IMG/VR virus record: IMGVR_UViG_3300043446_005562
Span: 124,001 to 188,000 of that record
Length of the DNA stretch: 64,000 nt
Strand: one strand, 5' to 3'
In this document: positions 11,714-63,023 of the stretch, piece after piece
How positions within the stretch are numbered: position 1 is the first letter of the stretch
Layout: the number at the start of each line of letters is the position of its first letter
Notes under the pieces: generated by a model
The model's database searches: none
Told to the model about the DNA's origin: nothing
The model's input: only the letters and a program-made list of their open reading frames with translations
Translations under genes and position numbers: made by a program

Positions 11714-12265
11714 ATGAGAATATTAGAATTTAAAGAATTCAAGCACTTACTATTGGAAGATGATCCTGCGGCACCACCGGCTGATGCTGCGGCTCCGCCG
11801 CCACCGCCTGCTGATGCAGCTGCCCCACCTCCACCGCCACCGCCGCCAATGGATCCAGGCGCGCCGCCTGCTCTACCAGCTGATCCAAATGCTGCACCTG
11901 CCGGCCCAGCCGCGCCAAGTGGCATGAAATTCATTTTTATCCAGGATGCTGAGAATAAAAAATGGCATGGTGCTCACGGAGAAGACGGAGGAACCAAAAG
12001 ATTTACTCAATACGAAGTAACCGCTGACGAATTAACAAAATGGTTAGAAGTTCATAAATTTGACAAGGAAAAGGATGTAGTTTTAGCGGCGCTTGCGGGT
12101 CGTCGACCAATGCCGCAAACTGTGTACACAACCTTCAAGAAAGAGGTTGTAGCTGGCGAATTGGGCACAGACAAGGGAATTTTGGACATTAAATTTGATT
12201 CCGAAGAAAACTTCAGCAATCCATCAACCTCTGATCTTGAAGTAGTTTTCTTAAAATCTAAATAA
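11714..12265 (+). CDS. Hypothetical late protein with Pro/Ala-rich linker; putative head-internal protein
   Basis: N-terminus MRILEFKEFKHLLLE (CTS-like), then a poly-Pro/ADAAAP tract and a globular C-terminus. Confidence 0.65.
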   Translation: MRILEFKEFKHLLLEDDPAAPPADAAAPPPPPADAAAPPPPPPPPMDPGAPPALPADPNAAPAGPAAPSGMKFIFIQDAENKKWHGAHGEDGGTKRFTQYEVTADELTKWLEVHKFDKEKDVVLAALAGRRPMPQTVYTTFKKEVVAGELGTDKGILDIKFDSEENFSNPSTSDLEVVFLKSK

Positions 12266-12999
12266 TGAGAAAATTTAAACGTTTCATATACGAATCAAAA
12301 TTCGATTCGTTCTCTAATATTATTGCAGATGAAATTCTTAGACTTGTAAAGGAGAGCTCTGCAAACAAGAGAACGATAACTCGTGATCTTAATTACGATG
12401 ATCCAGTTTCATTCTTTTTGACTCTGCATATTTCAAGATCCACAACATTTTCACCAGCAAAATCTAAAGCCTTTAAGCAGTTACCTTGGGAAACAATTAA
12501 TTTTGAGAGACGCGGCTTTGTGATTGATGCAAATTCTTATGTGCCAAGCGGCGATGAGGAACCGGAAGTTGAAATGTCAATAATCATTAGTCCAGAGGCT
12601 GAGCCAAATTGCTATCAAGCTCTCTATTTCAAAGTGCTAGACATTATTCGGCATGAAATGGAGCATCTACTTCAAAAGGGAGCCAATCAACAAGACGGCC
12701 ATATTGTTACAACTCGTCAAAAGACTAGATCAGCGGCCGAAGAGTCGTATCGATATTTTTTACTTGCTGACGAAATTCCATCAATGGTCTCAGGCATGCA
12801 CCTAGCTGCAGTTAAAAAGAGAATTCCAATTGATGTGGAATTTGAAGATTACCTATTTCCATTCATTGAATCTGGTTTTATAACAAGAGAAGAGGCGGAT
12901 AAAGTTATTAAAGTTTGGTTAGATTTTGCAGTGCAACATTTTCCGACCGTCAAAGTTAGTAATAATTTTAAATTTTTAAAACCGGGTGAGACTCGTTGA
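12265..12999 (+). CDS. Putative zincin-like metallopeptidase with CTS-like leader
   Basis: IIRHEMEHLLQ (HExxH) plus downstream DEIPS; N-terminus MRKFKRFIYES. Confidence 0.6.
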   Translation: MRKFKRFIYESKFDSFSNIIADEILRLVKESSANKRTITRDLNYDDPVSFFLTLHISRSTTFSPAKSKAFKQLPWETINFERRGFVIDANSYVPSGDEEPEVEMSIIISPEAEPNCYQALYFKVLDIIRHEMEHLLQKGANQQDGHIVTTRQKTRSAAEESYRYFLLADEIPSMVSGMHLAAVKKRIPIDVEFEDYLFPFIESGFITREEADKVIKVWLDFAVQHFPTVKVSNNFKFLKPGETR

Positions 13000-13005
13000 T
13001 ATAAG
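12979..13005 (+). promoter_or_regulatory. Early/middle promoter AAAC-N17-TATAAG
   Basis: Same spacing as the other copies; upstream of the Hc1-like gene. Confidence 0.6.
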
Positions 13006-13025
13006 ATACTAAAAATTGATTGAAA

Positions 13026-15807: not shown

Positions 15808-16133
15808 TGAGCGAAAATAAAGAATTTACACCGTTATTCGAACGCGTCCTAATCAAACCAGACAGCGTTGAAACAAAAACAGAGACAGGCATCATTTTAC
15901 CAGTTGAATCACGTAAGCGCCCAAATACCGGCGTCGTTATTTCAATCGGACACCTGGTAGCCGAAAATTCAAAATGTCCAGTAAAAGTAGGGGATAGGGT
16001 TCTCTATCAACGCTATTCCGGACTAGACGTAAAAGTAAATGGTGATTTGCATCACTTAGTTATGGCCAATGATCTTGTTGGCATTATAAATAATACTGCA
16101 AACAGCACAATTGAAATTGCGGACTATGCTTAA
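15807..16133 (+). CDS. groES: Co-chaperonin GroES
   Basis: PLFERVLIKP, KTETGIILP mobile loop, GVVISIG, VKVGDRVLY. Confidence 0.92.
   Translation: MSENKEFTPLFERVLIKPDSVETKTETGIILPVESRKRPNTGVVISIGHLVAENSKCPVKVGDRVLYQRYSGLDVKVNGDLHHLVMANDLVGIINNTANSTIEIADYA
16085..16093 (+). promoter_or_regulatory. Late promoter TATAAATAA inside the groES 3' end
   Basis: Exact T4 late consensus 32 nt upstream of the ATG at 16126. Confidence 0.6.
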
Positions 16134-16704
16134 AAACTTCTCACAATTTATTACTGAAAAACGCGGCGGCACCAAACAGATCTTTTGTGATCTAGACGGT
16201 GTGCTAGTTGATTTCAATCGGGGTTTTAAAAACCTTGAAGCAAACGAGGATAAGTTGACCCCGGAAGAATACAACAAGAAGCACGGAAAACACTCAATAT
16301 GGAAAATAATCGATCCTGAGGGAGAAAAATTCTGGATCAAACTTAAATGGACAAAGGACGGTCGCGAACTATGGGATTACTTAAGTCGCTATAATCCAAT
16401 TATTCTGTCTTCACCAAGCCGTAGTAAGCACTCAATTCCAGGTAAAATGGAATGGGTAAAGCGTAACTTGGGCATAAGTCAAGCAAAGCCAACAACTTCT
16501 GCATCAGATTGGGATCCAGCTAGCCGAATTATCCTAAGTTCAGATAAATTCAAGTTTGCCAGGTCAAAGGACGATATCTTGATTGATGACACTCGTGCTA
16601 AATTAGACAAATGGACTGCTGCTGGCGGAACTGGCGTGTTTCATAATGATGCAACCGATACAATTCGGGTTCTTGAAGAAATATTCACAAGTAAAAAAGA
16701 CTAG
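16126..16704 (+). CDS. HAD-superfamily 5'(3')-nucleotidase-like protein with CTS-like leader
   Basis: FCDLDGVLVDF (motif I), ILSSP, GKMEW, ILIDD (motif IV); N-terminus MLKNFSQFITEK. Confidence 0.8.
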   Translation: MLKNFSQFITEKRGGTKQIFCDLDGVLVDFNRGFKNLEANEDKLTPEEYNKKHGKHSIWKIIDPEGEKFWIKLKWTKDGRELWDYLSRYNPIILSSPSRSKHSIPGKMEWVKRNLGISQAKPTTSASDWDPASRIILSSDKFKFARSKDDILIDDTRAKLDKWTAAGGTGVFHNDATDTIRVLEEIFTSKKD

Positions 16705-32330: not shown

Positions 32331-32975
32331 TTAAACTTCCTCGTTTTGCTCTTCGTCTTCTAATGGCTTTTTACTTTCGTCAGCCATTTTTTCAGAGTCT
32401 TCTTCCTCTTCTTCGGTCTTGCACATCTTTTCGATTGCTGCGCATAATAGATCGCAAACTTCTTCTTTTTCAAGTTCCATCTTTTCGCAAATATTATCAA
32501 TCATTTCTTGAAGATCATCTCCGAATTCTTCAGTTAATTGTTCAAGTAATTCCTCGTCTACTTCGTATCCGAGTTCAACATTTTCGTCATTTTCTAGAGG
32601 TTCTTCAGCTTCATTAAATTCATAGCCGTAGTTTTCATTTACGAATTCTTCGTATCTAGCAATTTTGCCTTCTTCGACTGCTTCTACTGTTGCAATGGTT
32701 GGTTTAGCGTACATTTGTGTATAAGGTTTTTTCTTTGCTGTTCTGTAAACGATATCGCTTGAAAAACCTTTCCAAGCAGAATCATAATTTGGATTGAAAC
32801 GCCCGCCTTCAGCATTGGGGTCGCGCTCAACAATTCTTTGATATCCATCAAGAGATTTTCTCTTTGATTTATCAAAATCTTCTTTTTCAGAAGGACCACC
32901 AAACGCAGGCTTCTTTAAATTAGTCCATCTGTCTAGTGAAGGATTATCTCTGCGTTTTATGTTAAACATGTCCAT
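32331..32975 (-). CDS. Hypothetical late protein (basic N-half, acidic C-half), putative head-internal
   Basis: Follows the tail tube gene; internal KIARYEEFVNE motif. Confidence 0.6.
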   Translation of the reverse strand: MDMFNIKRRDNPSLDRWTNLKKPAFGGPSEKEDFDKSKRKSLDGYQRIVERDPNAEGGRFNPNYDSAWKGFSSDIVYRTAKKKPYTQMYAKPTIATVEAVEEGKIARYEEFVNENYGYEFNEAEEPLENDENVELGYEVDEELLEQLTEEFGDDLQEMIDNICEKMELEKEEVCDLLCAAIEKMCKTEEEEEDSEKMADESKKPLEDEEQNEEV

Positions 32976-34538: not shown

Positions 34539-35042
34539 TTATCCGATTTCTTTATCACCACGAAATTCTTTTCCGCGGTTTGATTTTTTCTTGTCTGGGT
34601 CAACTGGTTTGTAATTAGCCCAAATTTCATTGTAAATACGGCAAGATGCGCCCATGAAATTAACAATGCCGACGTATTTCTTACGATCGTCACCTTTCAT
34701 TTTTGAAATTCTTTTGCCAATTGTGCGAGCATCATCCAAATCCAATTCTTCATCATCCGACTTTCCAACTAAATCCTTTAGTGAATTTGTTTCAGTCACG
34801 TAAGATTCAAAGGTTGGATGCACATGAGGGCCATGTGGACCCATTGGATCCAAGTCAGTATCTTCTGATTCAAGATCAGCAGATCCGCCCATTCTTTCTA
34901 TTTGAGCAAGGCCTTCTTCCTGAGAGTTTACTGGAATTAAAGTATTTCGACCAACGACATAGTAGCCGTCTTCTCTTTCTTCAATTCTAAGTGGACCCGA
35001 CAGATCGAATTCCATGCCATCACTAAACTTAAGTTTTGACAT
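34539..35042 (-). CDS. Hypothetical late protein with internal CTS-like motif
   Basis: HPTFESYVTET separates two small domains. Confidence 0.6.
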   Translation of the reverse strand: MSKLKFSDGMEFDLSGPLRIEEREDGYYVVGRNTLIPVNSQEEGLAQIERMGGSADLESEDTDLDPMGPHGPHVHPTFESYVTETNSLKDLVGKSDDEELDLDDARTIGKRISKMKGDDRKKYVGIVNFMGASCRIYNEIWANYKPVDPDKKKSNRGKEFRGDKEIG

Positions 35043-35053
35043 GTTAATTTGAT

Positions 35054-35413
35054 TTATTTAGGCATCTTTGCCATAGAAGGATCAACCTTCTTGTTAAGGG
35101 CTTTTCCTTTGATAACTAATTTAGAAATCTTTGGATCAACTTCTTTTTTAGAAGCAGTTCCGCGACCCTTTGGCAAATCAGCAATACCGGTTTTTACCAT
35201 TTTCTTAGGCTCAGAACCACGACCCTTTGGCAAATCTGCCATTTCAGGTTTAACAGTTTTGCTGATAGACTTGCCCTTTCCAGCAGGAAGGTCAGAAGTT
35301 TCATCATCAACTTGTTTGGTGATCTTTTTACCTTTAGCAGGAGCACCCTTAGAAAGATCTTGATTCATTTTCTTTTCGAAAAGATACTCTTCGTAGCTTA
35401 AAACTGATTTCAT
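35054..35413 (-). CDS. Lys-rich repeat protein with CTS-like leader; putative DNA-condensing internal protein
   Basis: MKSVLSYEEYLFEKK, then 19-aa repeats around DLP(K/A)G(R/K)G; late box at 35459-35467. Confidence 0.7.
   Translation of the reverse strand: MKSVLSYEEYLFEKKMNQDLSKGAPAKGKKITKQVDDETSDLPAGKGKSISKTVKPEMADLPKGRGSEPKKMVKTGIADLPKGRGTASKKEVDPKISKLVIKGKALNKKVDPSMAKMPK
35164..35300 (-). repeat. 57-bp period coding repeat (DLPKGRG units)
   Basis: GACCCTTTGGCAAATC at 35164 and 35221, with a diverged third copy near 35275. Confidence 0.75.
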
Positions 35414-35481
35414 GTGAACTTTGTTTTTTTAAATATTTTTTTGCTAATCCTAGCTAGGTTATTTATTAGCGAATCTTTACT

Positions 35482-35537: not shown

Positions 35538-37250
35538 TTAATATGCAGTTGAAGGAGCTACAGAACCTGTCAATACTCCTAGTCCTGTTACAGACATTGT
35601 GATGTATTGAGTTTCTGGGTGCCATCCTGCTTCTGTAATAGCATAACGAGATTTCATACCTAATTTTGGAGAGAAAGTACCCTCTGCGATAGTTTGAAGA
35701 CTCTCAGCCATGATATATGGAAGGAATTTAACACCTGGTTCTTCATCAGCACCTTTACGACCGATGTGGATACGGTTATCAGTGAACTTCAAGTTAGGAT
35801 CAACGTATACAGTTAGACCGTGTACTTTACCAGCTGGGTAAAGTTGGCCAGGACCTGAAGGAAGATCGTTATTGAATGGAGCGAAAGAATAACCAGCAAC
35901 ATCAGCAAGAGCTGAAGCTACACGACCGTTAGTAACGATGTATGTACCAGCACCGAAACGACCTCTGTGATAAATCAAGTTAGCCATTTCAAGGATTTTA
36001 GTAACAACACGACGTTGTAGAGTTGAGATGTTTTCGAAACCAGAACCTACAGTAAGATCTAAAGTAGTGATTCCTGAACCTTCAACTGAGTTAACGCTAG
36101 TTGCGTGAGTAGCACCTAAGTTCAATACTCTGTCAACTAATTTTTTGTTGATACCTTGTGCAAGTTCGTTAACCGCAACGTTTTCCAACATAGAGATTAC
36201 GTCGAAATTCCAAACACGGTTAAGATCTTGGATTTGCTCAACAGTTGCAGAGATTGCTACTTGGTCACCTTTTGCTTCGATGAACTTAGTGAACATACGA
36301 AGACCCATTTGACGGAATTTAGAAACTTCAGCAACTTCACGTTTCATACCGTCGAAGTTAACTTGCGAACCGTTTGAACCTAAGAAAGGACCATCGAATG
36401 CAGTTGAAGCATAGTCAGAATCGCTTACTGAAGTGAAACCTGAAATGTGATTTTCTAGAGCAGATACTAAAGTAGCTGTCATACCGTTAGCACCACCGAA
36501 ACCTTTCCAAGGTTCAGCTGAAGTACCAGCAGCAGAGTTACCTGTATCGGTACGTGAACCTGTGTAAGTAACGTTATCAAGAGCAGCAACTGCGTCAGCT
36601 ACAGTAGTAGTAGATGAATCAGTAGTACCACCTTGGATTACTTTTAGGATAGGTAAACCGTCGATACGAGATTTTCCAACGTATTGGAATTTGAAAGCAG
36701 CGCCAGTGTTACCAGTATCACCTTGGATATAGTCACCAATTGTAATACCTGCATTAAGAGCAGAAGACAATTTAACCATATAAGGTTCGTACTGAGTATC
36801 TAAGTTACCACCTTGGTATACGTAGTCCAAGTAAGGTAAGAAACCTACTGGAGAATCCATAGGAACTACACCAACTAGGTCGAAACCGATAGTTTTAGCA
36901 GCTACTTGGATAGCTACTGGAAGAAGGCTTGGGAATTTATCACCAGAACCAGATACAGAAGCACCGTAACCATTTTTTACACCAGCTGTGAATGGTGTCA
37001 TTGAGCTAGTTGGAGCAGAGATTGCACCAATTGAGCTGATAGAACCAGGTTGTTGTAAGAACAAACCAGGAGCTGAACCTGAAGCCAAAGCTTCGTTCAA
37101 TGAGCCTGCGTTATCGAAGATAGCGTGGTTGTGAGCGTAGTCAACTAACCAAGGGCGAGCTTTGATGTCTGCACCGTAACCTTCTAATACTGGAGCCCAA
37201 GTTTCAGTAACTGAAGCGTCATTCAGTCTTTTGAAAATTTTTGTTGCCAT
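35538..37250 (-). CDS. gp23: Major capsid protein (gp23-like)
   Basis: TWAPVLEG, IGFDLVGVVPM, TVEQIQDL, ELAQGINK, GRFGAGTYIV, FLPYI, TFSPKLGMKSRYA; SLNEA probable maturation site; strongly biased codons; TATAAATAA late box at 37389-37397. Confidence 0.93.
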   Translation of the reverse strand: MATKIFKRLNDASVTETWAPVLEGYGADIKARPWLVDYAHNHAIFDNAGSLNEALASGSAPGLFLQQPGSISSIGAISAPTSSMTPFTAGVKNGYGASVSGSGDKFPSLLPVAIQVAAKTIGFDLVGVVPMDSPVGFLPYLDYVYQGGNLDTQYEPYMVKLSSALNAGITIGDYIQGDTGNTGAAFKFQYVGKSRIDGLPILKVIQGGTTDSSTTTVADAVAALDNVTYTGSRTDTGNSAAGTSAEPWKGFGGANGMTATLVSALENHISGFTSVSDSDYASTAFDGPFLGSNGSQVNFDGMKREVAEVSKFRQMGLRMFTKFIEAKGDQVAISATVEQIQDLNRVWNFDVISMLENVAVNELAQGINKKLVDRVLNLGATHATSVNSVEGSGITTLDLTVGSGFENISTLQRRVVTKILEMANLIYHRGRFGAGTYIVTNGRVASALADVAGYSFAPFNNDLPSGPGQLYPAGKVHGLTVYVDPNLKFTDNRIHIGRKGADEEPGVKFLPYIMAESLQTIAEGTFSPKLGMKSRYAITEAGWHPETQYITMSVTGLGVLTGSVAPSTAY

Positions 37251-37267
37251 TTTATTAAAATGTTTTT

Positions 37268-38545: not shown

Positions 38546-39250
38546 TTGCTTATTGTTATTTTGTTGTTTAGGAATTTCAGAATTATTTATTCTATAGATC
38601 TTCACAGAATCTTCAAAAGAGAAGCTTTCTGATATATCTGTTAATTTATTTGTGATTGAAGCAGTCTTTAAAGTATCCAAAGACTCAAACAGAACTGAGA
38701 AATTGTCCTTAAGGCTTTCAGATACCTGAGTTAGGGATGCTTGCGAGAAACCAGGTTCAGCAACAATATCGTAGGTAAAGATTTTTTGAATCTTAACAAC
38801 ACCGCTCTCATTTACATTACCTGCAGCTCTTGATGAGGTTGAGATAGTACAGCCTGACTCAACTAGGGTCTTTGCAATACGACCGCATGGAGTATCAAGT
38901 ACTCTTAATTTGATACGAACAGTATTTGAAGGCTCGTCATAGTTAAGAGATTCAACCACGTGAGATACGTTCTTTAAGGAAACGTCAAAGCTTTGTGGAT
39001 GATCAAGCTCTCCAAATAACTGACCCTTTTTGATTTTTTCGTTTAGATAGGAAAGATGAGGCAAGTACTCTTGCTTCTCATAGATACGATTGTTTTCGTT
39101 CTTTTGTCCAAAGACTGCGCAAATACCTTCAAGGATAATTGAACCGTCATTTGATTTTGAAACATTTAATGCTTCATTAACTCGTTCAATGATGAATAAT
39201 TGACTTTCATCAAAGCCGGTCTTTAGTAAGTTTGTTTTAGCGCTAGTCAA
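37268..39250 (-). CDS. gp21: Prohead protease (gp21-like) fused to core/scaffold domain
   Basis: LEGICA, NENNRIY, GELDHP, NVSH, LDTPCG, STSSRAAG, TYDIVAEPGF; long helical repeat C-terminus; TTG start; late boxes at 39269-39277 and 39316-39324. Confidence 0.88.
   Translation of the reverse strand: MTSAKTNLLKTGFDESQLFIIERVNEALNVSKSNDGSIILEGICAVFGQKNENNRIYEKQEYLPHLSYLNEKIKKGQLFGELDHPQSFDVSLKNVSHVVESLNYDEPSNTVRIKLRVLDTPCGRIAKTLVESGCTISTSSRAAGNVNESGVVKIQKIFTYDIVAEPGFSQASLTQVSESLKDNFSVLFESLDTLKTASITNKLTDISESFSFEDSVKIYRINNSEIPKQQNNNKQMANDFVSREEMNQYSQLVKKKFDALQENLSKNNAGLRALNENSNESPETGKLVEYVNYLAGEMEKMVEYSNYLSTMLNKGIGYTEHVAEKVNNVIDYGDYLAEKIEKNIQYSDYLGEKVNQSINYGEYIAENVEKNIAYSNYLAQNVDKGIQYAEYVAENAEKGIKFANYLAENLDAAIKYSEYLGENLQKGIAYSEYIAETMNEKITPNTNIKARRLLADVKKLNENASYEVNDASGVDELTNAVDGILAHIKSNSANAVLENKYPFLKLLSESNKQKFYALDTETKSAIVETMKGAIFFTEGEVINIMEAVLNKQVENTPAYVRFMPEKYKSVFEGMTDNERNWIAAQASTQVINTPYQAKAFWDSRDLRAISERIAQANNINNQTINESQGKEGYVSLTQVHESLRGYSSNYLDALKRRAQN
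37934..38395 (-). repeat. Eleven tandem 14-aa repeats in the scaffold domain (K.I.Y..Y[LIV]AE...)
   Basis: KLVEYVNYLAGEME / KMVEYSNYLSTMLN / ... / KGIAYSEYIAETMN; 42-bp periodicity. Confidence 0.85.
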
Positions 39251-45118: not shown

Positions 45119-45121
45119 TAA

Positions 45122-52203: not shown

Positions 52204-52659
52204 CTAGGAATAGGGATCAAGGTCCCGATTGGGAATATTCTTCCAGCGTTTTTCAGCATTACCGGTACCTCCTCTTGCAAGCTGAACCTCCTCAGCCGTG
52301 TCCTTTATGAATCTAAGAGCGCCCTCGTAATCGCCATCCGTTAACATATCATCAACCATGCCAGCGGCTGCCTCTGAAAGCTTGACCCTATAGACAACTG
52401 GATGGCGCTGATCATTAAATCTGCACCGCATTATCATCATGTTCAGGTTTCCACCAAACGCCTTTTTATCTGGGTCGTCCTTGCCGCTAACGTCGCTTAG
52501 ACCAAGACCGTGAAGTCTGTCCAGGTTCTGTGATCTAGCTAGGGAAGGTTCCTTGATAAAGGACTCTATGCCGTTACAGTCGGCGATACCGTAATACCAA
52601 TGAGATTCGCCAGTACCACGTGACTCGTTGAATGATTTGAATGAATTTGCGTACTTCAT
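52204..52659 (-). CDS. Hypothetical late protein with CTS-like leader
   Basis: MKYANSFKSFNES; late box at 52681-52689. Confidence 0.65.
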   Translation of the reverse strand: MKYANSFKSFNESRGTGESHWYYGIADCNGIESFIKEPSLARSQNLDRLHGLGLSDVSGKDDPDKKAFGGNLNMMIMRCRFNDQRHPVVYRVKLSEAAAGMVDDMLTDGDYEGALRFIKDTAEEVQLARGGTGNAEKRWKNIPNRDLDPYS

Positions 52660-52745
52660 AAGGTTAAAATTATTATACCTTTATTTATTCTGGTCAGGAT
52701 TACCCGTTTATGGTATAATATAATTAAGATTAAATGTTCAATTCT

Positions 52746-53297: not shown

Positions 53298-54435
53298 TCT
53301 TTCCAGGAGAACACACCGACGAGATTGAGAAACTTGTTCCAGCAAGAGGTGAGAATACTCGAATTGTTAAATTGTCAAGATCAAAGCCTTTAGTTATCGC
53401 GAATGTAAAATTTACATTTTTTGCGCCCTGTTGATTTGGACCCGGCTGAACCTCAAATCTATTATTTACATATCCTCCATTTTTAGCCAGAGCAGTTTCG
53501 ACAGTCAATTTACCCCCGACTGCTGCAATCTCCTTGTTTATTGCATCCTTTAGGCCTGGACATTTTGCCGGATCATTCAATTCCTTTTCAAAATCTCTAT
53601 ATCGCGGGTCCGACGCATCGATTGTTGAATTTTTTCCAGTGGTCGCATCGTATACTGTTGTTCGAGTGGTTGATCCCAACCATGGGCTTAGGAATTCGGT
53701 TTCCTTATATTTAAAATACACCATATCCGGAACAGTCATTGGATCAAATGTTAAAGTTACAAGGTTTCCAACTGGGACGACCACAATCTGATCTTGATTG
53801 TATCCAACGTAATTGTTTGACTGATTCGCCTGGCCACCCTGTCGAGAGGCTGGCTTCATGTTGCACGTAATTTTTTGATTGTCCGGAATCGCATCGCCTG
53901 TTTGAGTTAGTGACATCGACACATATTGATATTTCTTGCGTTCTTCATCTGACGCATTTGCCTCACCTCCTGAATTTGGCCGAGAGACCTGTTTAATTTC
54001 AATCTTCTTTTTTAATTCTTCAGGTGAACAGCCTAGCCTTTCACAAAAATAAGAAACAGTAATTGACTCAAGCGTTTTTAATCTGGCTTGGCAAAGAGCC
54101 GCATTTCCATTGCCTGTGATTTGATAGCCGGCTGCCTGCAATTTAGCCTTAAGGTCTTGACCGAGTCCAAGTTTAGAAGTTGACGCAACCAGTGTAAGAG
54201 TGGTCTTTTGATTCAAGTATTTAGGGACGCGAATTAAACCAATAGGTTTATTCAAATCTGTTTTTAGTTGAGTCAGAGATGCTGCTGGAATGTCAGCTTG
54301 TTCATATTTACCTGATTCAAAATTAAAATTAAATTTTACTTCAGCACTCAAATCTCCAGGATTTGCTGCAGAAGAGTCTTCATTCAAAACATCCTTTAAA
54401 AATCCTAAAAAGTTTTTTATTATCGGGTCATTCAT
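53290..54435 (-). CDS. Hypothetical late protein with CTS-like leader and possible OmpA-like domain
   Basis: MNDPIIKNFLGFLKDVLNED; FNFESGKY...LVASTS...NAALCQARL resembles an OmpA_C pattern; late box at 54457-54465. Confidence 0.55.
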   Translation of the reverse strand: MNDPIIKNFLGFLKDVLNEDSSAANPGDLSAEVKFNFNFESGKYEQADIPAASLTQLKTDLNKPIGLIRVPKYLNQKTTLTLVASTSKLGLGQDLKAKLQAAGYQITGNGNAALCQARLKTLESITVSYFCERLGCSPEELKKKIEIKQVSRPNSGGEANASDEERKKYQYVSMSLTQTGDAIPDNQKITCNMKPASRQGGQANQSNNYVGYNQDQIVVVPVGNLVTLTFDPMTVPDMVYFKYKETEFLSPWLGSTTRTTVYDATTGKNSTIDASDPRYRDFEKELNDPAKCPGLKDAINKEIAAVGGKLTVETALAKNGGYVNNRFEVQPGPNQQGAKNVNFTFAITKGFDLDNLTIRVFSPLAGTSFSISSVCSPGKTT

Positions 54436-54522
54436 GATTGGCTTAGTATATTTGAATTATTTATCTTGCCAGCTGACAAGTTTATAGGTATATTATAATT
54501 AAGCAACTAAAAGCTATACGAT

Positions 54523-55031: not shown

Positions 55032-55637
55032 TTAAGCCGTTGCAAGATTCGATAAACCGGCCTTAGTCAATTGCTCCTTCCAAATTATTGGAAAATTCTT
55101 GTTCCACTCAGCAACTCGACCTTTTCTATCCAGCTTGTCGCTGTCATTTAAAACGGAATACATGTTCTTAAGAGCCGTAACTTCAAGATTGGTATCGCCG
55201 GCTGCTTGCATAGCGTTCATTTGTTCAAGCGAGTAGGCTTTTTTCCAACCCAGTTTTGCGTGAAGTTCTAATGCATCTTCCACCGAATCTAAAATCATTC
55301 TGCCGAACATTTTTTTACCTGGATTATTTGGATCATTGCTCACAACCGGCTGAGCCGCTTGACTAGGCATAATCTTTTTAAGAGCCGCTTGCATTGAGGC
55401 CTGATCTTTACTAGCGCCGGTGTCGGTAACGGATCCCTCAGTTGCGTCCCAATAGGCATACATGCTGTGTGCTTTATCATCAGCGAATGGATACTTATAG
55501 GCAACTCCATTTGATTTTAGAGTGTAACCCTCAGGTTTTGCGCCCGGACCAGAAGTGCCGGCTGTTGCTGCTGGATTTGTTGGTGCGGCCGCTGCTTCCT
55601 CGTTCAACCACTGTGTATAACCTTTAATAATTTTCAT
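55032..55637 (-). CDS. Hypothetical late protein with CTS-like leader
   Basis: MKIIKGYTQWLNEE followed by an Ala/Pro linker; late box at 55661-55669. Confidence 0.65.
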   Translation of the reverse strand: MKIIKGYTQWLNEEAAAAPTNPAATAGTSGPGAKPEGYTLKSNGVAYKYPFADDKAHSMYAYWDATEGSVTDTGASKDQASMQAALKKIMPSQAAQPVVSNDPNNPGKKMFGRMILDSVEDALELHAKLGWKKAYSLEQMNAMQAAGDTNLEVTALKNMYSVLNDSDKLDRKGRVAEWNKNFPIIWKEQLTKAGLSNLATA

Positions 55638-56836: not shown

Positions 56837-57279
56837 GCTTCATTCATTGGAACAATTTGACCGCCACACTCGCAAGTCATGTCTTCGTTGCACTCATAGG
56901 CTTCATAGGTCATATTACACTCATTACAAGTGTACGCGCCAGCCGATTCGTCAAGCTCATCACCAAATTTTTTGATTGGACCCTCGGCTCCAGCCTCAGG
57001 TGCTTCGGTCATTTCATTTATCAAGAAGTTTGCAACCTCCTCAATATCGTCCTTTGATGTTGCAATATGATCAGCTGCCCAGTCGTGACCATTGTGCAAT
57101 AGTTCATCAACTTTAGCTGGATCCATTTTTAACATGGCATCAACGTGACGTTTAATCGTTTCAAGATTACCAAAGAACATGTAGTGATCAGCTTCATGAT
57201 TGCCAGCTTGATCAACTTCAGGATTTGACATTTCTGGATCCTGTTCAAAGGCTTCAAATGTTTTTACTAGGTTTTTCAT
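56830..57279 (-). CDS. Hypothetical late protein with CTS-like leader and C-terminal zinc ribbon
   Basis: MKNLVKTFEAFEQ; HDWAADHI; CNEC...CECGG. Confidence 0.6.
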   Translation of the reverse strand: MKNLVKTFEAFEQDPEMSNPEVDQAGNHEADHYMFFGNLETIKRHVDAMLKMDPAKVDELLHNGHDWAADHIATSKDDIEEVANFLINEMTEAPEAGAEGPIKKFGDELDESAGAYTCNECNMTYEAYECNEDMTCECGGQIVPMNEAW

Positions 57280-57287: not shown

Positions 57288-58799
57288 TTAGTTATTTTGG
57301 TTTATAAAATCTGAGAATTCCAAGATGTGACTTGTCTTCTTCTTTTTTTTCTTTTTGGTTGGATTAAAATTATCACCGGAACCCAGCGTAGTTGCGGTTG
57401 GCGGCGTGATTGGGCCCATAGCACCAATTGAGCCGGGCACTTGAATCGCCATGCCGGGTGCTGAGCCAGCCTCTTCAAAAGCCGCTTCCTTTTTAGTGTC
57501 CAACGCCGCTGTGCCGGGAATGAACATGCGACTTAGCGCATCCGCTTTCATCTCGCCCTCACGACCCTTTATCGCTTTACCGACAAGCTTGGCCGTGTTA
57601 TTTAGAGTTTTTGCGTATATGTTATGAATGTGTGAGCCAAAGTTAGCAAAGGCTTCGCCGGCTGGTGTCAGAGGCTTGCTTCCAGTTCCCAATAGAAAAT
57701 CCATTAATGATTGTAGACCTCTACGAAACTTCATTACTGCGCTCTCATCCGCGATCTGTTTGCCAGTCACAGGCAAAGAAACCTTTTCATAGAGTTTAAG
57801 TCGCTTGTTGAAATCAAAATGAATTCCCTTGGCCCTGTCCAGTTGCAGATCTTTGTTTTTCAACTTTGCAATCAGCGCAATCTCAGCCTTGTCCAGCATC
57901 TTTGATAATTCAGAAATGGTGTCCTCCTTGGATTGGCCCTGTAGAGCATTTATTTTTGCTCTGATTTGAGAAATTTCGGTTGTTAATTCCTTTTCGCTCT
58001 TGAAATCTGTGTACTTTAATTTGATAATTCTTTCCAGGACCTTGAGCTCTTCTCTGGAATAGGGTCTTTCGCCCATAAATCTTTCAAAGCGGTCTTCGCC
58101 GATCTGCTCCTTAACCTTGTCCTCGGTGTAGTCTTTTGCTCTGGCCAATTGATCCTTATCTTCATCGTTAAAGTCCTCAGTAATCTCATCTATTACGATC
58201 CATGAATCAATAATGTCTTCCGCAATCTGTTCCTTTTCTTGAGGGTCTTGACTCTTTTCGATTGAACTAAGATTTCTTTGATTTTGTTGAGCAGCCACCG
58301 TGATGAGAGTCACATAAGACTCCTGTAAGGTTCGCTGAACATCCTCAATCTTTTTTGAAATGTCTTCCGCCACTTTTTTAATCTGGGCGCTCTCCTTGGA
58401 TTTTAATTGACCGTATAGCTGATCCAATACGCTAATTCTCTTTGCGATTTGGCTCTGTTGAGCTGTCAAGCTCTTAAGTCTCTTCTTGTTTGCTTTACTG
58501 CCGCTGGCCAAAGCCTCTTTTATCTGATCGGTTATCTTTTGCAGGCGCTTCTTTGAATAGTCAAGATAGAACTCAACCGCCTGTTTGGTCTTGACAATAT
58601 CCGACTCTCTCCAAGAATCAACCTTGATTGATTTATCAATCATGCTGTCCAGGAATTTTTCCATTTCAGAGATTGCATTGAGCTGGTCTTGGGTCAATTG
58701 ATTAGAGTCCACATTGGGTTCTCCCGAGCTCGTCTGGATAAGATTTGCCTCGGTCAATAAATCTTCAATGTGCTTAAATCGTTTTACCTTTAGGAACAT
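57288..58799 (-). CDS. Coiled-coil late protein with CTS-like motifs at both ends
   Basis: MFLKVKRFKHIEDLLTE; C-terminus K8-TSHILEFSDFINQNN. Confidence 0.6.
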   Translation of the reverse strand: MFLKVKRFKHIEDLLTEANLIQTSSGEPNVDSNQLTQDQLNAISEMEKFLDSMIDKSIKVDSWRESDIVKTKQAVEFYLDYSKKRLQKITDQIKEALASGSKANKKRLKSLTAQQSQIAKRISVLDQLYGQLKSKESAQIKKVAEDISKKIEDVQRTLQESYVTLITVAAQQNQRNLSSIEKSQDPQEKEQIAEDIIDSWIVIDEITEDFNDEDKDQLARAKDYTEDKVKEQIGEDRFERFMGERPYSREELKVLERIIKLKYTDFKSEKELTTEISQIRAKINALQGQSKEDTISELSKMLDKAEIALIAKLKNKDLQLDRAKGIHFDFNKRLKLYEKVSLPVTGKQIADESAVMKFRRGLQSLMDFLLGTGSKPLTPAGEAFANFGSHIHNIYAKTLNNTAKLVGKAIKGREGEMKADALSRMFIPGTAALDTKKEAAFEEAGSAPGMAIQVPGSIGAMGPITPPTATTLGSGDNFNPTKKKKKKKTSHILEFSDFINQNN

Positions 58800-59475: not shown

Positions 59476-62430
59476 TTACTTTATAACTATGCTAAAACGA
59501 TTGTGATTTTGCGGATCTGGCCAGTCCGGCCCGCCTGTACAGCGTAAATGCTTCTGGAATTCCTCAAAGCCCGAATCAACTTTAAAATAGGCAATTTTTG
59601 AGGTTTCTTTATCAACCACCATAAGTATCTTGAAGTCATCAACCTTTGCATAATACAGAAGAGAATGCCAGGCTAAAAAATCAATAAAATTTTGATACTC
59701 AATTTTTGTAGGAGTGTCGTTTTGAAAAAAATCCGAGATTCCTTTGCGCAAATTAGCTTTATGGCCGCAACCTTTTTCCCAAATTCCACCTGAAAAAATT
59801 TCTGAAAACCATTCAAAAAAGTCGTCCGGTTTTAGAGCAGACTCCTCAGAAATAATCTTGAAAAGAGGTTTCCATGTGTTAAGAAATCCTTTCTGTCTAA
59901 TATTGAACGCATTTAAACCATCTTTTGCAAAGCATTGATCCAAGAAGTTACTGACTTTCTGATTATTATTGACAAGACCGGCGAGTTCCGCTAATTTTGT
60001 TTCTATTATAAACTTACCGTTTGTAAAACCACCCTGCTTCGACGATACCAATCTTCCGCCGTTTCCTTTAACCTCAATGTTAATTTCACCAGCCGCAATA
60101 TCTCCTTCTCCAGATTTCTTCACACCATCTTGAAATAATATTGAAATCAATTCGCCAATACCTTTACCCTGAGTAGTTCCGGATTTAGTTGTTATCGAAA
60201 AATTTAGGATCTCACTAAATATCGTTGGATCAATTTCAGGAAAATCGGATTCATCTAATTTTCCTGAATTCTTCAGTCCTGAAATGTCATAACCACTAGA
60301 TTTTTCAATGTAGTCATACAGCTTATCTAGAGTCGGTTCGTGTCCGTGTGAAACCTCTGCGCATATTTGACTAAAACGATCAGCGTCAGTTTTTAGATAT
60401 CCACGATTTACAATTTCAGTGGATATGTTGTTCAACACCCCTGATGATTTATGAGTTGCAATAGATCTTTTGATTTGAGCTATTATTTTTTTGTAATCTT
60501 CTGGCGAGGATTGCCTTAGCGCAGCTAATTCTTGTTCAAACTCATCATCCATATTTAGAGGTGGAACCTCATTTGCGAATGTTGCCTCAACTGATTCATT
60601 TAATTTTGGCGAGGCCAACTCATTGATGTCTCGATTCATGTTAAAAAATTCGGAATGAATCGCGCCGGGAGCAGCCGCTTTGAAATTCTGATAGTCTTCG
60701 GATCTTAGAGAATTCATAATGGAATCCTTGACCCCAGCGATCGGTAATTCAATTAGAGCAACGTCATTTCTAAAATTAAGATTTCTTGAGCGTCTTTTTG
60801 CCAATTCCATCTGTAGTGCCAGATCCTTTATTCTACTCTTTGTACCTGAGATGATTACTGGTTCAAAATCCGGCTTTATTGCTCTTAATAGATTTTCAAC
60901 CTCGCCGTCCGGTACCATTCGATGACCGGTAACAAAACTTGGATGGTGGGTTGCTACTTTGTCCAAATAGCCCTTAACCGTTTCTTTTTTAAAGGGTTTC
61001 GTCTTGTTTACGGAGCCGTCGTGAATGCACACAAATAGGCATGGGAAACCATTCATATCAAACAGTTTCTGTGCGGATTTAAGATGACCTGGGTGAAATG
61101 GTTGAAAATCTGAAATGATTAGATTAACTCTTTTAGACTTTCTTTCCTCTTCTGGCACCTCCGCGAAAGTTTCAAAATAGCCGGGTTCAAGATCCTCTCC
61201 AACAAATTCACCAAATGTTGGAAAGTAATTTTCGTAAACCGCATCGCCTAATAACACATTACTAATCTTTTCAATTTGAGAAACAAGATTCGCGCGCATT
61301 GGCTTGGTAAAAAATGTTGAGCTCACCCTAATTGTCTTTTTTCTAAACATGTTCAAAAAGACACGATAGATCTCCTTGTAATTTGGGTTTGACTCAATTA
61401 GGTTTGTGACCTTTTTATTATGAATTAGGTTGTAATTAACGTTAAAGTCTTCTCTTTGTAAAAATTCTGGAATTTGAATGTCCAAATCAATGTACTTCTC
61501 TCCAAACTCAGCAATGAAATCAAGATAGATATGATTCACCAATGAGATATAGCGTTGCTCATAAGAATCGCCGCTTAGTTTAATATCACGTAATTCGCTT
61601 AATGAATATCTCTCAATGAAATTCATCAAGTCAATCACAATGATCCAAATGTAATCGTCCGATTTCTTTTGAACACGGTCCTGTGCCTTTTGTTTTGCGT
61701 TTGCCTGAAATACTGGATCAACCAACTTTGCCAAAAAGACAGAGTCTTCGGATTTATTTGCAGGATCGTAGAATCTAAATACTAGACCCTCAATGTCTTT
61801 GTCCAGCGTATCGCGTAAAAAAGTTGTTCCAAGCTCAGGATTTAGAACTGATACAATATATTTTGTGAATGATGTTGTCTTAAATTTATCAACCAATTCC
61901 TCAAACGGAGTATAGATGAACTCTTGAATTTTCTCCTTTTGATCTGGCGACAATTTGCCCTCAAATACAATCGGAGGTCTCTCAATCATGAGCAGGTCGG
62001 CCCATTTGTCAAGGGTCGCCTTGTCCTGAATGGTCTCTTTCATTTCGCCCTTATCATCAAGCACATGAATGTAGCTTAGGATAAGTCCATTTTTGGGCAA
62101 TCGGTCGTAGGCAATGGTCTGGGCTTTTGGGCTGGTAAACCATTCCATGCCAAAATGATAGTTTTCTGGAATCTGGGCTATGGTATCAGCCCCAAGGTTC
62201 TCAAAATGTCTAATAGCCGGTTCAAAGTAACGACTGAGTACTCGATCGATGTACGTAATTTCAGCGTTCCTTTTAAAGAAGCGGAACTTACTCGTATTAG
62301 GATCTTTTTGGGCGCCAAAGAAGGCCCCATCCATTTTTTCATTTACAATTACAGTTTTGTTTAAAAGGCCATCTAAGAAGTCCTTTCCGCGTTTGTCATA
62401 AACGTCTCTTAAGTGTGATAGTCCTGGCAT
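59476..62430 (-). CDS. Three-domain protein: ATP-dependent (RNA) ligase-like + HxGH nucleotidyltransferase-like + PD-(D/E)xK nuclease-like
   Basis: EKMDG (K32), GMEWF, DIEGLVFR and LAKLVD ligase motifs; FQPFHPGH at about aa 446; GKGIGE...GEGDI...IEVKG in the C-terminal third. Confidence 0.7.
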   Translation of the reverse strand: MPGLSHLRDVYDKRGKDFLDGLLNKTVIVNEKMDGAFFGAQKDPNTSKFRFFKRNAEITYIDRVLSRYFEPAIRHFENLGADTIAQIPENYHFGMEWFTSPKAQTIAYDRLPKNGLILSYIHVLDDKGEMKETIQDKATLDKWADLLMIERPPIVFEGKLSPDQKEKIQEFIYTPFEELVDKFKTTSFTKYIVSVLNPELGTTFLRDTLDKDIEGLVFRFYDPANKSEDSVFLAKLVDPVFQANAKQKAQDRVQKKSDDYIWIIVIDLMNFIERYSLSELRDIKLSGDSYEQRYISLVNHIYLDFIAEFGEKYIDLDIQIPEFLQREDFNVNYNLIHNKKVTNLIESNPNYKEIYRVFLNMFRKKTIRVSSTFFTKPMRANLVSQIEKISNVLLGDAVYENYFPTFGEFVGEDLEPGYFETFAEVPEEERKSKRVNLIISDFQPFHPGHLKSAQKLFDMNGFPCLFVCIHDGSVNKTKPFKKETVKGYLDKVATHHPSFVTGHRMVPDGEVENLLRAIKPDFEPVIISGTKSRIKDLALQMELAKRRSRNLNFRNDVALIELPIAGVKDSIMNSLRSEDYQNFKAAAPGAIHSEFFNMNRDINELASPKLNESVEATFANEVPPLNMDDEFEQELAALRQSSPEDYKKIIAQIKRSIATHKSSGVLNNISTEIVNRGYLKTDADRFSQICAEVSHGHEPTLDKLYDYIEKSSGYDISGLKNSGKLDESDFPEIDPTIFSEILNFSITTKSGTTQGKGIGELISILFQDGVKKSGEGDIAAGEINIEVKGNGGRLVSSKQGGFTNGKFIIETKLAELAGLVNNNQKVSNFLDQCFAKDGLNAFNIRQKGFLNTWKPLFKIISEESALKPDDFFEWFSEIFSGGIWEKGCGHKANLRKGISDFFQNDTPTKIEYQNFIDFLAWHSLLYYAKVDDFKILMVVDKETSKIAYFKVDSGFEEFQKHLRCTGGPDWPDPQNHNRFSIVIK

Positions 62431-62435
62431 AGTAT

Positions 62436-63023
62436 TTAGTCTAGTGAACCGAAATCGCCTCTGCTCATAGCTGCGGCAAATTCTCTATCGGCTTTTGAAT
62501 CTTTAGCGATATTAAGCCCGATAACGCGCTCGGCAATTTCCGGATTTTGTTTTAAAAATTTAATTAGGGCTCCTGTATCAATGTCCTGGTATTCTCCAGA
62601 TCCACCAAATTCAACAAGCTCTTTTTCTAACCTAAACATTGGCGATCTATTAGTCAGCTCAAGGTGCCAAATGCTAAACGTTATGATTTGACCGTTGCGC
62701 TCCATGTGATCGGCCATATCTGTCAAATCTTTGACTACGTCAGCTAACGCGTATTCCTTGTCCATTGCCCTGTCCCATTCGTTCCATTGCTTTCCATCAA
62801 CCTTTATGTTGATTGGAGTAGATGCGTTGGAGAATCCGGGCACCAATACAGTTTCCAGATTTGGGCACAGTTCAAATATTTCAGCCAGATCCACTGCAAA
62901 ATCCTCAATAGTTTCGCCCCTTAGACCGTGATCAGGTAGAAGACCCTTTGCTTTTAACCAGGCTCTGCGCTGTCTGTGAGCTGATTCGGCTATAAATTCG
63001 GTGAATCCTTTAAGATTTTTCAT
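62436..63023 (-). CDS. Hypothetical late protein with near-perfect T4-type capsid targeting sequence
   Basis: MKNLKGFTEFIAES compared with T4 MKTYQEFIAE; late box at 63040-63048. Confidence 0.7.
   Translation of the reverse strand: MKNLKGFTEFIAESAHRQRRAWLKAKGLLPDHGLRGETIEDFAVDLAEIFELCPNLETVLVPGFSNASTPINIKVDGKQWNEWDRAMDKEYALADVVKDLTDMADHMERNGQIITFSIWHLELTNRSPMFRLEKELVEFGGSGEYQDIDTGALIKFLKQNPEIAERVIGLNIAKDSKADREFAAAMSRGDFGSLD

What the first reader, a model, noticed from the sequence alone, without database searches (positions are those of the whole stretch)
11714..63023. Large family of late proteins sharing a T4 capsid-targeting-like motif: a putative virion-cargo injection system
Seen in sequence: unrelated ORFs start with an aromatic-x-x-aromatic-hydrophobic-x-E motif. 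Examples: MRKFKRFIYE (12265), MLKNFSQFITE (16126), MKSVLSYEEYLFE (35413), MKIIKGYTQWLNE (55637), MKNLKGFTEFIAE (63023). Variants: MRILEFKEFKHLLLE (11714), MKYANSFKSFNE (52659), MNDPIIKNFLGFLKDVLNE (54435), MKNLVKTFEAFEQ (57279), MFLKVKRFKHIEDLLTE (58799). Internal copies: YEEFVNE (32975 gene), FESYVTE (35042 gene), FGEFVGE (62430 gene). All lie in units headed by a late NATAAATAA box, and I saw the motif on none of the early-promoter genes. Established: T4 internal proteins use MKTYQEFIAE to enter the prohead, gp21 removes it after (I/L)xE, and the proteins are ejected with the DNA. Inference: this phage packages at least 13 diverse cargo proteins (metallopeptidase, nucleotidase, ligase/nuclease, DNA binder, unknowns) for delivery at infection. 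They are candidates for anti-defence or host-takeover effectors.
Basis: partly seen in the sequence, partly recalled or inferred. Interest (0 to 1): 0.85.

Follow-up and report, generated by a model that had tools for sequence, protein, structure and literature searches.

The report
T4-style capsid-targeting tags on phage proteins
A large uncultured freshwater phage puts a short tag, matching the one phage T4 uses to load proteins into its head, on about ten unrelated late proteins and repeats it in its head scaffold, so it probably packages many proteins with its DNA.

Summary
All quoted peptides are at the stated coordinates. The strict motif [FYW]xx[FYW][ILVM]xE starts within the first 15 residues of 5 of 64 window proteins. 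Shuffles give 0.16-0.36 and never reached 5 in 5000.

The motif covers the four positions mapped by mutagenesis in the T4 capsid-targeting sequence (CTS). On 67 annotated T4 genes the same pattern marks only IPII and IPIII at N-termini, plus the gp23 maturation site.

The window encodes a T4-type (S77) prohead protease with the His/Ser motifs and a gp23-type capsid protein.

New here: the protease ORF continues into a scaffold with 11 tandem 14-residue units, 7 of them strict motif copies. This scaffold is conserved in about 65 relatives and is common among the best 150 of 322 strong cluster matches. It probably has its own internal late promoter and start codon.

The tag is the best-conserved feature of three unrelated families: a HAD nucleotidase, an HExxH protein and an unknown. 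The linker behind it varies.

About 9-11 of the 13 candidates hold up, one is weak and one is uncertain. Packaging, cleavage, injection and any anti-defence role are inferred, not shown. I rate it a new variant of a known kind.

The parts
37268..39250 (-). 660-aa ORF. N-terminal T4 gp21-type prohead serine protease (GELDHP at aa 80, TSSR at aa 138) fused to a C-terminal scaffold-like region.
   Evidence: Pfam Peptidase_S77 1.1e-8 and S80 7e-7. PHROG head maturation protease 3.9e-38. BLASTP to T4 gp21 aligns the His and Ser motifs. ATAAATAA box 26 nt upstream.
37928..38389 (-). Eleven tandem 14-residue units (aa 288-441) in the scaffold region. Seven match [FY]xx[FY][ILV]xE exactly and four are degenerate.
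   Evidence: Five to ten strict copies, mostly at 14-residue spacing, occur in all of about 65 related loci. 14 is the commonest spacing in 84 of the 150 best cluster representatives.
37271..38545 (-). Probable nested scaffold gene (425 aa from Met236), with its own late box at 38583-38590 inside the protease ORF.
   Evidence: A box followed by an in-frame ATG after a variable 21-75 nt linker occurs in every relative. The Ile and Asn codons of the box are always ATA-AAT, while flanking codons vary synonymously, and the Met is invariant. RNA contigs are 2.7-4 times deeper downstream of about 38.7 kb in 2 of 4 runs.
35538..37250 (-). gp23-type major capsid protein (570 aa), with an N-terminal region of about 55-100 aa holding conserved VLE and [LI]NE candidate cleavage sites.
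   Evidence: Pfam Gp23 1.5e-40. tblastn hits 2393 phage records, T4-like phages (Escherichia, Synechococcus, Klebsiella and others) among them. BLASTP to T4 gp23 1e-14. N-terminal alignment of 28 relatives.
35375..35413 (-). Propeptide MKSVLSYEEYLFE| of a 119-aa basic (pI 9.9), Lys-rich protein encoded directly after the capsid gene (35054-35413). This is the best candidate for a T4 IP-like internal protein.
   Evidence: Motif present in 28 of 28 unique orthologues. Box at 35459-35466. The RNA contigs covering this unit end at 35430-35442 in all four metatranscriptomes.
12265..12294 (+). Propeptide MRKFKRFIYE| of a 244-aa protein (12265-12999) with an invariant RHExEH, a putative zinc metallopeptidase.
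   Evidence: In 13 homologues F4 and F7 are invariant, and I8 and E10 are at least 90% conserved. No Pfam or PDB fold match.
16126..16158 (+). Propeptide MLKNFSQFITE| of a 192-aa HAD-type 5'(3')-deoxyribonucleotidase-like protein (16126-16704). Its late box lies inside the GroES gene at 16086-16093.
   Evidence: PHROG 2643 1.5e-23, with the domain starting at residue 17. 871 homologues in all. In 96 unique N-termini the two aromatic positions carry 4.1 and 4.0 bits against 1-1.6 bits in the flanks, and the linker is 14-54 aa.
55599..55637 (-). Propeptide MKIIKGYTQWLNE| followed by an Ala/Pro-rich linker. 201-aa protein of unknown function (55032-55637).
   Evidence: The orthologue keeps YTQWLNE at 60% overall identity. 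Box 31 nt upstream.
62985..63023 (-). Propeptide MKNLKGFTEFIAE| of a 195-aa protein of unknown function (62436-63023). Its core FTEFIAE is nearly identical to T4's YQEFIAE.
   Evidence: M1, F7, F10 and E13 are invariant in 10 homologues down to 31% identity. In the AF2 model residues 1-15 are low-confidence and lie outside a confident globular domain. No PDB match.
11714..11758 (+). Variant propeptide MRILEFKEFKHLLLE| followed by a Pro/Ala-rich linker. 183-aa protein (11714-12265).
   Evidence: The orthologue in L089 keeps the peptide and the box while the linker differs.
52624..52659 (-). Variant propeptide MKYANSFKSFNE| of a 151-aa protein (52204-52659).
   Evidence: FxxFNE is kept in orthologues at 84% and 53% identity. 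Box 29 nt upstream.
54379..54435 (-). Variant propeptide MNDPIIKNFLGFLKDVLNE| of a 381-aa protein (53290-54435).
   Evidence: Box 29 nt upstream. No orthologue among the six relatives' loci searched, so conservation is untested.
58749..58799 (-). Variant propeptide MFLKVKRFKHIEDLLTE| of a 503-aa protein (57288-58799). A second motif copy lies at the extreme C-terminus (FSDFINQ, 57297-57317), after a poly-Lys run.
   Evidence: Both ends are conserved in orthologues at 36-62% identity. The C-terminal copy is a strict FSEYLKE in L087 and L088.
57244..57279 (-). Weak candidate, MKNLVKTFEAFE|Q, on a 149-aa protein (56830-57279).
   Evidence: Orthologues in L087 and L088 read TFESFDH, without the Glu.
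32634..32654 (-). Internal motif YEEFVNE (aa 108-114) of a 214-aa acidic protein (32331-32975). It separates a conserved N-terminal half from a hypervariable acidic tail.
   Evidence: Motif present in 29 of 30 unique orthologues.
34791..34811 (-). Motif FESYVTE (aa 78-84) of the 167-aa ORF 34539-35042. In most relatives the protein is about 100 aa and the motif is N-terminal. Here Met67 (34842-34844) could be the real start.
   Evidence: Alignment of 33 orthologues. Met positions.
61195..61215 (-). Internal FGEFVGE (aa 406-412), and YLDFIAE (61507-61527), in the 984-aa protein 59476-62430 that has an RNA-ligase domain. Status uncertain.
   Evidence: Pfam RNA_ligase 2.5e-7. The motifs are kept in 5 orthologues, but the surrounding sequence is conserved too.

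Best explanation
The motif is this phage lineage's version of the T4 capsid-targeting sequence (CTS). It is a 10-19-residue N-terminal peptide, occasionally internal or C-terminal.

Proposed mechanism, step by step:
1. The two aromatic residues (P7 and P4) dock the protein onto the assembling prohead core.
2. The [ILVM]-x-Glu (P3-P1) is then cut by the gp21-type (S77) prohead protease.
3. The core is built from a scaffold that carries 11 tandem 14-residue units of the same motif. It is probably made in bulk from a nested gene inside the protease ORF. Proteolysis would chop it into 14-mers that leave the head.
4. The tagged proteins stay inside. These are a basic 119-aa IP-like protein, a HAD nucleotidase, an HExxH protein and several proteins of unknown function.
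5. By analogy with T4 internal proteins, they would leave with the DNA at infection.

Shown here: the motif, its enrichment, its conservation, its presence in the scaffold, the protease and capsid homology, and the association with late boxes.
Inferred: docking, cleavage at the Glu, retention in the head, and injection.
For: 1. T4 IPII and IPIII start MKTYQEFIAE, and the gp23 maturation site is FGSFLTE(65). Both fit the pattern.
2. Mutagenesis cited in PMC9026906 places targeting at CTS residues 4 and 7 and processing at residues 8 and 10. These are exactly the four constrained positions.
3. The pattern finds only IPII and IPIII at the N-termini of 67 T4 CDSs.
4. An S77 protease with GELDHP and SSR motifs and a gp23-type capsid protein are present.
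5. The window has 5 strict N-terminal hits against 0.16-0.36 expected.
6. Scaffold repeats are present in all of about 65 relatives and in most of the 150 best cluster representatives.
7. In three unrelated families the tag is the most conserved N-terminal feature and the linker behind it varies.
8. The PHROG nucleotidase domain starts only at residue 17. AF2 puts the tag outside the folded domain.
9. Late boxes are associated with motif genes. RNA contig ends lie just downstream of the box of the 119-aa gene in 4 runs.
10. More tagged ORFs lie in flanking sequence of this genome (L084) and of a closely related 239-kb contig from another sample (L092, L093).
Against: - There is no protein-level evidence: no virion proteome, no cleavage data and no cultured relative.
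- The predicted capsid-protein cleavage sites (VLE, [LI]NE) lack the aromatic pair. So the aromatics are not simply required by the protease, and their docking role is borrowed from T4.
- Residues after the Glu (S, K, E, D, A) differ from T4's usual Ala.
- Most candidates are acidic or neutral, unlike the classic basic IPs.
- A packaged nucleotidase has no precedent that I know of.
- A PSSM trained on the scaffold repeats alone ranks only 3 of the 5 strict N-termini among its top 14 hits.
- A 42-kb stretch of the more distant huge phage LR756500.1 shows no strict N-terminal motif.
Confidence: 0.72

Rival explanations
1. The motif is only a prohead-protease recognition site on core or scaffold accessory proteins. 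These are degraded and expelled during maturation, like T4 gp22, gp67 and gp68. Nothing is delivered to the host.
For: The scaffold itself carries the motif every 14 residues. The 214-aa acidic protein has an internal site followed by an acidic tail that resembles T4 gp67 and gp68. Several candidates sit in the head-tail module.
Against: Tags sit on folded enzyme-like domains: a HAD nucleotidase and an invariant HExxH protein. A single N-terminal cut would leave those domains intact. In T4 the same architecture marks retained and injected proteins.
Confidence: 0.15
2. The peptide is an N-terminal signal for something other than the capsid. Examples are recognition by the phage's own GroEL/GroES, DnaJ or ClpB-like chaperones, oligomerisation, or targeting to another late-infection structure.
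For: The phage encodes GroEL, GroES and a DnaJ-like protein in the window. A ClpB-like ATPase lies just beyond the window's right end in L092, a closely related 239-kb contig from another sample. No direct evidence ties the tag to heads.
Against: This does not explain the tandem copies inside the protease-scaffold protein. It does not explain the match to all four mapped T4 CTS positions. It does not explain the invariant Glu at the position where a gp21-type enzyme cuts.
Confidence: 0.08
3. The similarity is chance, a composition effect of an AT-rich genome, or shared ancestry of duplicated 5' gene ends.
For: The genome is AT-rich (GC 36-43%), so its proteins may be rich in Lys, Phe, Ile, Asn and Glu. 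The loose variant pattern also matches the UvsX-like protein. The pattern was chosen after inspecting the data.
Against: Shuffles and internal windows never reach the observed count. The T4 control shows no false N-terminal hits. Within each family the aromatic and Glu positions are conserved far above their flanks. The protein bodies are unrelated.
Confidence: 0.03

Closest known systems
Bacteriophage T4 capsid-targeting sequence (CTS) of internal proteins IPI, IPII, IPIII and Alt, removed by prohead protease gp21
   Same: A short N-terminal peptide with aromatic residues at P7 and P4, an aliphatic residue at P3 and Glu at P1 (T4 YQEFIAE, here FTEFIAE, FSQFITE and others). A gp21-family protease, a gp23-family capsid protein, and late expression from a TATAAATA-like box. 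Unrelated protein bodies share one tag.
   Different: There are many more tagged proteins (about 10 in 64 kb, more in flanking sequence of this and a closely related genome), including enzyme-like ones. Most are not basic. The protease is fused to the scaffold, and the scaffold carries tandem copies of the tag motif. T4 gp22 has no strict copy. Copies also occur internally and at a C-terminus. Capsid protein identity to T4 is only about 25%.
Inner-body and ejection proteins of phiKZ, 201phi2-1 and SPN3US giant phages, processed by gp175/gp245 (S80) proteases
   Same: Jumbo phages with a gp21-related protease that cuts after Glu and loads many proteins into the head for ejection.
   Different: Those phages mostly use propeptides longer than 100 residues and a minimal (S/A/G)-x-E site without the aromatic pair. 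Here the propeptides are 10-19 residues with a T4-type core. The capsid protein belongs to the gp23 family.
Nested protease/scaffold genes such as lambda C/Nu3 (stated from general knowledge, not tested here)
   Same: A scaffold protein is made from an internal in-frame start within the protease ORF, so the protease carries the scaffold sequence as its C-terminal part.
   Different: Here the protease is of the T4 S77 type and the internal start has its own late-promoter-like box. The scaffold contains periodic tag-like cleavage motifs.
Encapsulin cargo-loading peptides and the phage P1 Dar head-protein loading system (analogies only)
   Same: A short portable peptide or a dedicated pathway directs unrelated proteins into an HK97-fold shell. 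In P1 the cargo is anti-restriction (one search lists PMC9024508 and PMC12810830).
   Different: The signals and partners are different, and no homology was tested or is claimed.

Membership tests
T4-type CTS / internal-protein system | N-terminal peptide of 10-20 residues with the targeting determinants (T4 residues 4 and 7, aromatic) and the processing determinants (residues 8 and 10, aliphatic and Glu) | tested here: met
   Five strict and four good variant N-termini. T4 sequences come from the GenBank record. The mapped positions come from PMC9026906.
T4-type CTS / internal-protein system | gp21-family (Peptidase S77) prohead protease with catalytic His and Ser | tested here: met
   Pfam PF03420 at 35.2 bits, above the 27-bit cut-off. 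BLASTP to T4 gp21 aligns GELDHP with GELNHP and SSR with SSR.
T4-type CTS / internal-protein system | gp23-family major capsid protein with a cleavable N-terminal region | tested here: inconclusive
   Gp23 family membership is met. The cleavage site is only predicted from conserved VLE and [LI]NE.
T4-type CTS / internal-protein system | Late expression together with head genes | tested here: inconclusive
   The ATAAATAA box is enriched and heads the sheath, tube, protease and motif genes. RNA contig boundaries agree for one unit. However, contigs carry no direction or timing. A gp55-like small sigma-domain ORF was seen upstream of the window in L094 only as a weak Pfam hit.
T4-type CTS / internal-protein system | Tag is portable and independent of the cargo fold | tested here: met
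   The same core sits on a HAD nucleotidase, an HExxH protein and unrelated unknowns. Linkers vary in length. The tag lies outside the folded domains.
T4-type CTS / internal-protein system | Tagged proteins are incorporated into proheads and cleaved after the Glu | not testable with these tools
   This needs virion proteomics or reconstitution. No cultured relative was found.
T4-type CTS / internal-protein system | Mature proteins are ejected into the host with the DNA | not testable with these tools
   Inference from T4 only.
phiKZ-like inner-body protein system | Long propeptides (over 100 residues) with a minimal (S/A/G)-x-E site | tested here: not met
   Propeptides here are 10-19 residues with an aromatic pair. 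The phiKZ and SPN3US features are taken from PMC5694885.

The most novel reading that the evidence does not exclude
The tandem 14-residue units of the scaffold form the docking array, and a CTS is a single scaffold unit borrowed by cargo. If so, cargo co-assembles with the scaffold by the same aromatic contacts, and one protease specificity then frees cargo and dismantles scaffold at once.

Because the fused protease-scaffold family is very large (322 clusters at E<1e-30), this would give a sequence-only rule for listing the packaged, probably injected, proteins of a whole uncultivated clade of large aquatic phages. It would also explain what the T4 CTS binds.
Probability: 0.3. Interest if true: 0.75.

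Novelty: new variant of a known kind. Interest (0 to 1): 0.6.

Why it matters
Proteins injected with phage DNA act before any phage gene is expressed, so they are prime candidates for counter-defence. T4 IPI*, which blocks the GmrSD restriction enzyme, is the classic example.

Here a simple sequence tag appears to mark such proteins in an abundant lineage of uncultured freshwater phages whose hosts are unknown. That turns 'which proteins are packaged?' into a question that can be asked from metagenomes and checked by metaproteomics.

The tag-bearing tandem scaffold and the nested scaffold gene also suggest how T4-type targeting could work physically. I found no account of what the T4 CTS binds in the T4 papers I consulted.

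Tried and rejected
1. A PSSM trained only on scaffold repeats from other genomes was too tyrosine-specific. It ranked 62436, 35054 and 16126 at places 3, 4 and 14 of about 19,000 positions but missed the other two strict hits. I did not use it as a test.
2. Pfam, PHROG and NCBIfam gave no family for most candidates.
3. The ESM Atlas gave only unnamed viral clusters.
4. AF2 models of the HExxH protein (pLDDT 69.5) and the 195-aa protein (pLDDT 75.4) found no PDB match at E<0.001. Functions therefore stay open, and 'metallopeptidase' rests only on the invariant RHExEH.
5. Single-protein search for related loci recovered only 1-4 relatives for the cargo genes.
6. Megablast of 20 kb against GenBank phages found nothing. 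There is no cultured relative and no virion proteome to consult.
7. A 42-kb region of the distant huge phage LR756500.1 has only 2 strict copies in its protease-scaffold and no strict N-terminal hit. The expansion cannot be generalised that far.
8. The internal FERFMGE in the 57288 protein is not conserved and is treated as chance.
9. The N-terminal YLEFLKD of the 671-aa protein at 52137 has Asp in place of Glu, and the gene lies among baseplate genes. I noted it but did not count it.
10. A literature search found no description of tag-like tandem scaffolds, nor of a CTS in the possibly related 'moraphage' lineage. The library is limited, so this is weak evidence.
Full report
**What the window is.** The window is part of a 252.6-kb IMG/VR contig, IMGVR_UViG_3300043446_005562, at contig positions 124001-188000. 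No GenBank phage is close at the DNA level.

It is a distant T4-type phage.
- It has a gp23-family capsid protein (35538-37250, minus strand), about 25% identical to T4 gp23 over the aligned 263 residues. The best GenBank matches are uncultured huge phages and Lak phages at 31-37%.
- It has a T4-like tail sheath, tail tube and baseplate hub, plus UvsX, gp32-like SSB, gp46/47-like nuclease, a helicase and a PolB fragment. It also encodes GroEL, GroES and a DnaJ-like protein.
- Near-identical sequence occurs in freshwater, reservoir, river and estuary metagenomes and in riverine metatranscriptomes.
- It may belong to the recently named aquatic 'moraphages' with predicted Bacteroidota hosts (PMC12619734). 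I did not test that membership.

- I defined a strict pattern, [FYW]xx[FYW][ILVM]xE. It starts within the first 15 residues of 5 of 64 proteins: 12265, 16126, 35413, 55637 and 63023.
- Shuffling residues 2-30 gives 0.16 such proteins on average. Random internal windows give 0.36. Neither exceeded 3 in 5000 trials.
- Per position the N-terminal excess is 14-fold (p = 1.5e-4).
- Because the pattern was written after seeing the data, I ran it on 67 annotated CDSs of T4 itself. At N-termini it marks only IPII and IPIII, the proteins for which the capsid-targeting sequence (CTS) was defined. One of its four internal hits is the gp23 maturation site FGSFLTE(65).
- The looser variants are less specific. 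The UvsX-like recombinase also fits a loose version.

**The late box holds too.** ATAAATAA occurs 20 times against 7 expected. It sits 14-53 nt upstream of the sheath, tube, protease, 52137 and 59409 genes and of seven motif genes. The other three N-terminal motif genes follow in the same box-headed runs. A box directly upstream is found for 7 of 10 motif genes against 5 of 54 others (p = 1.2e-4).

In four metatranscriptomes the capsid gene is 5-70 times deeper than its neighbours. That pattern argues for RNA rather than contaminating DNA. The contig covering the 119-aa motif gene ends at 35430-35442 in all four runs, which is 17-29 nt downstream of the box at 35459-35466. These are assembled contigs without direction, so this is supportive only.

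**Why it is a T4-type targeting and cleavage tag.** A review of T4 head work reports that only the first 10 residues of IPIII are needed for incorporation. Targeting depends mainly on residues 4 and 7. Processing depends on residues 8 and 10. Asp at position 10 blocks processing but not targeting (PMC9026906).

In MKTYQEFIAE those four residues are Tyr, Phe, Ile and Glu, which are exactly the four constrained positions of the motif here. The window's 660-aa ORF at 37268-39250 has a Peptidase_S77 domain and aligns to T4 gp21 across the GELNHP (His) and SSR (Ser) motifs.

The same ORF continues into a scaffold-like region. It holds eleven tandem 14-residue units (aa 288-441). Seven are strict copies of the motif and four are degenerate.
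- Five to ten strict copies, mostly at 14-residue spacing, are present in the orthologue of every one of about 65 related loci, whose capsid proteins are 61-100% identical.
- A full-library search gives 322 clusters at E<1e-30. Among the best 150 representatives (down to 29% identity), 124 carry at least one strict copy, and 14 is the commonest spacing in 84.
- T4 gp22 has no strict copy.
- In all relatives an ATAAATA box lies inside the ORF at the end of the protease domain. After a variable 21-75-nt linker comes an invariant in-frame Met that would start a 413-439-aa scaffold protein.
- The Ile and Asn codons that form the box are always ATA-AAT, while neighbouring codons vary synonymously.
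- Two of the four RNA runs are 2.7-4 times deeper downstream of this point.
- I read this as a nested scaffold gene with its own late promoter.

**Conservation shows selection on the tag itself.**
- HAD nucleotidase family (871 homologues, contigs up to 293 kb). Among 96 unique N-termini the two aromatic positions carry 4.1 and 4.0 bits, the aliphatic position 2.4 and the Glu 2.65, against 1-1.6 bits in the flanks. The linker to the catalytic DxDG motif varies from 14 to 54 residues. The PHROG nucleotidase domain begins only at residue 17.
- HExxH family. F4 and F7 are invariant, and I8 and E10 are at least 90% conserved.
- 195-aa family. M1, F7, F10 and E13 are invariant down to 31% identity.
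- AF2 models place the tag in a low-confidence N-terminal arm outside the folded domain.
- The 119-aa basic protein after the capsid gene keeps the motif in 28 of 28 unique orthologues.
- The 214-aa acidic protein keeps its internal copy in 29 of 30, followed by a hypervariable acidic tail.
- The motif of the 167-aa ORF is N-terminal in most relatives, which encode a protein of about 100 aa.
- The 503-aa protein keeps both its N-terminal variant and a C-terminal copy. This recalls the processing of both ends of T4 Alt.

**Grading the thirteen candidates.**
- Strong: 12265, 16126, 35054, 55032 and 62436.
- Good variants: 11714, 52204 and 57288.
- Plausible but without comparative data: 53290.
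- Good internal sites: 32331 and 34539.
- Weak: 56830, where the Glu is lost in orthologues.
- Uncertain: 59476.
- Further tagged ORFs lie outside the window: a 261-aa protein starting MVKTFTQFITE in L084, from this same contig, and a 52-aa ORF with FTNFIEE in L093. L092 and L093 come from a 239-kb contig of another sample that encodes identical copies of the two query proteins.

**What remains inference.** No tool here can show packaging, cleavage or injection, and there is no cultured relative. The predicted capsid-protein cleavage sites lack the aromatic pair. This fits the T4 split between targeting and processing residues but does not prove it here. The functions of most cargo are unknown. 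The anti-defence idea is only an analogy with T4 IPI*.

**Verdict.** The CTS reading is well supported. The count and the functional claims are only partly supported. The system is a new variant of a known kind. The concept is established for T-even phages, whose diverse internal proteins share only a CTS. Three things appear to be undescribed: the expanded and enzyme-bearing repertoire, the protease-scaffold fusion with tandem tag units, and the nested scaffold gene in a large uncultivated clade (the literature search was limited).

Noticed in passing
window 38583-38590 (-) and Met236 at 38543-38545 (-): A late-promoter-like box lies inside the protease ORF. It is followed by an invariant in-frame Met and probably marks a nested scaffold gene. 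The box codons are fixed as ATA-AAT in all relatives, while neighbouring codons vary synonymously.
   Followed up: yes
window 52660-52733 and 54436-54522: Two divergent intergenic regions share a 27-nt element (TTTAT.GGTATA.TATAATTAAG). The element lies just upstream of two small plus-strand genes with signal-peptide-like N-termini (52734-53297 and 54523-54966) that are interleaved among the late tagged genes. Its core is found nowhere else in the window.
   Followed up: partly
window 57297-57317 (-): The 503-aa tagged protein ends with a poly-Lys run followed by a second, C-terminal motif copy. That copy is a strict match in two orthologues.
   Followed up: partly
window 20860-22251 (+) and L084/L092 (window-equivalent 68630-70087): Family-B DNA polymerase appears as separate ORFs about 46 kb apart: a 463-aa PolB-like ORF in the window and a 485-aa DNA_pol_B ORF beyond its right end. 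A DNA_pol_B_exo2 ORF also overlaps the window's left end.
   Followed up: no
L094 7900-8343 (-), about 1.7 kb left of the window start: A 147-aa ORF has a weak Sigma70_r2 hit. It could be the counterpart of the T4 late sigma factor gp55 that would read the ATAAATAA boxes.
   Followed up: no
window 16086-16093 (+) inside 15807-16133: The late box for the tagged nucleotidase gene lies within the coding sequence of the GroES-like gene. The two genes overlap by 8 nt.
   Followed up: no
window 40282-45949 (+): A run of five plus-strand genes, not examined further, sits between the head module and the baseplate genes. I ran no searches on it.
   Followed up: no
window 36830-37260: The 5' part of the capsid gene is highly polymorphic in the riverine RNA contigs, with many substitutions, small indels and a variant that skips 102 nt. 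Several related strains appear to co-occur.
   Followed up: no
window 50122-52137 (-): A box-headed 671-aa protein among the baseplate genes has YLEFLKD at residues 18-24, which is the motif with Asp in place of Glu. In T4, Asp at that position allows targeting but blocks processing. It may be chance.
   Followed up: no
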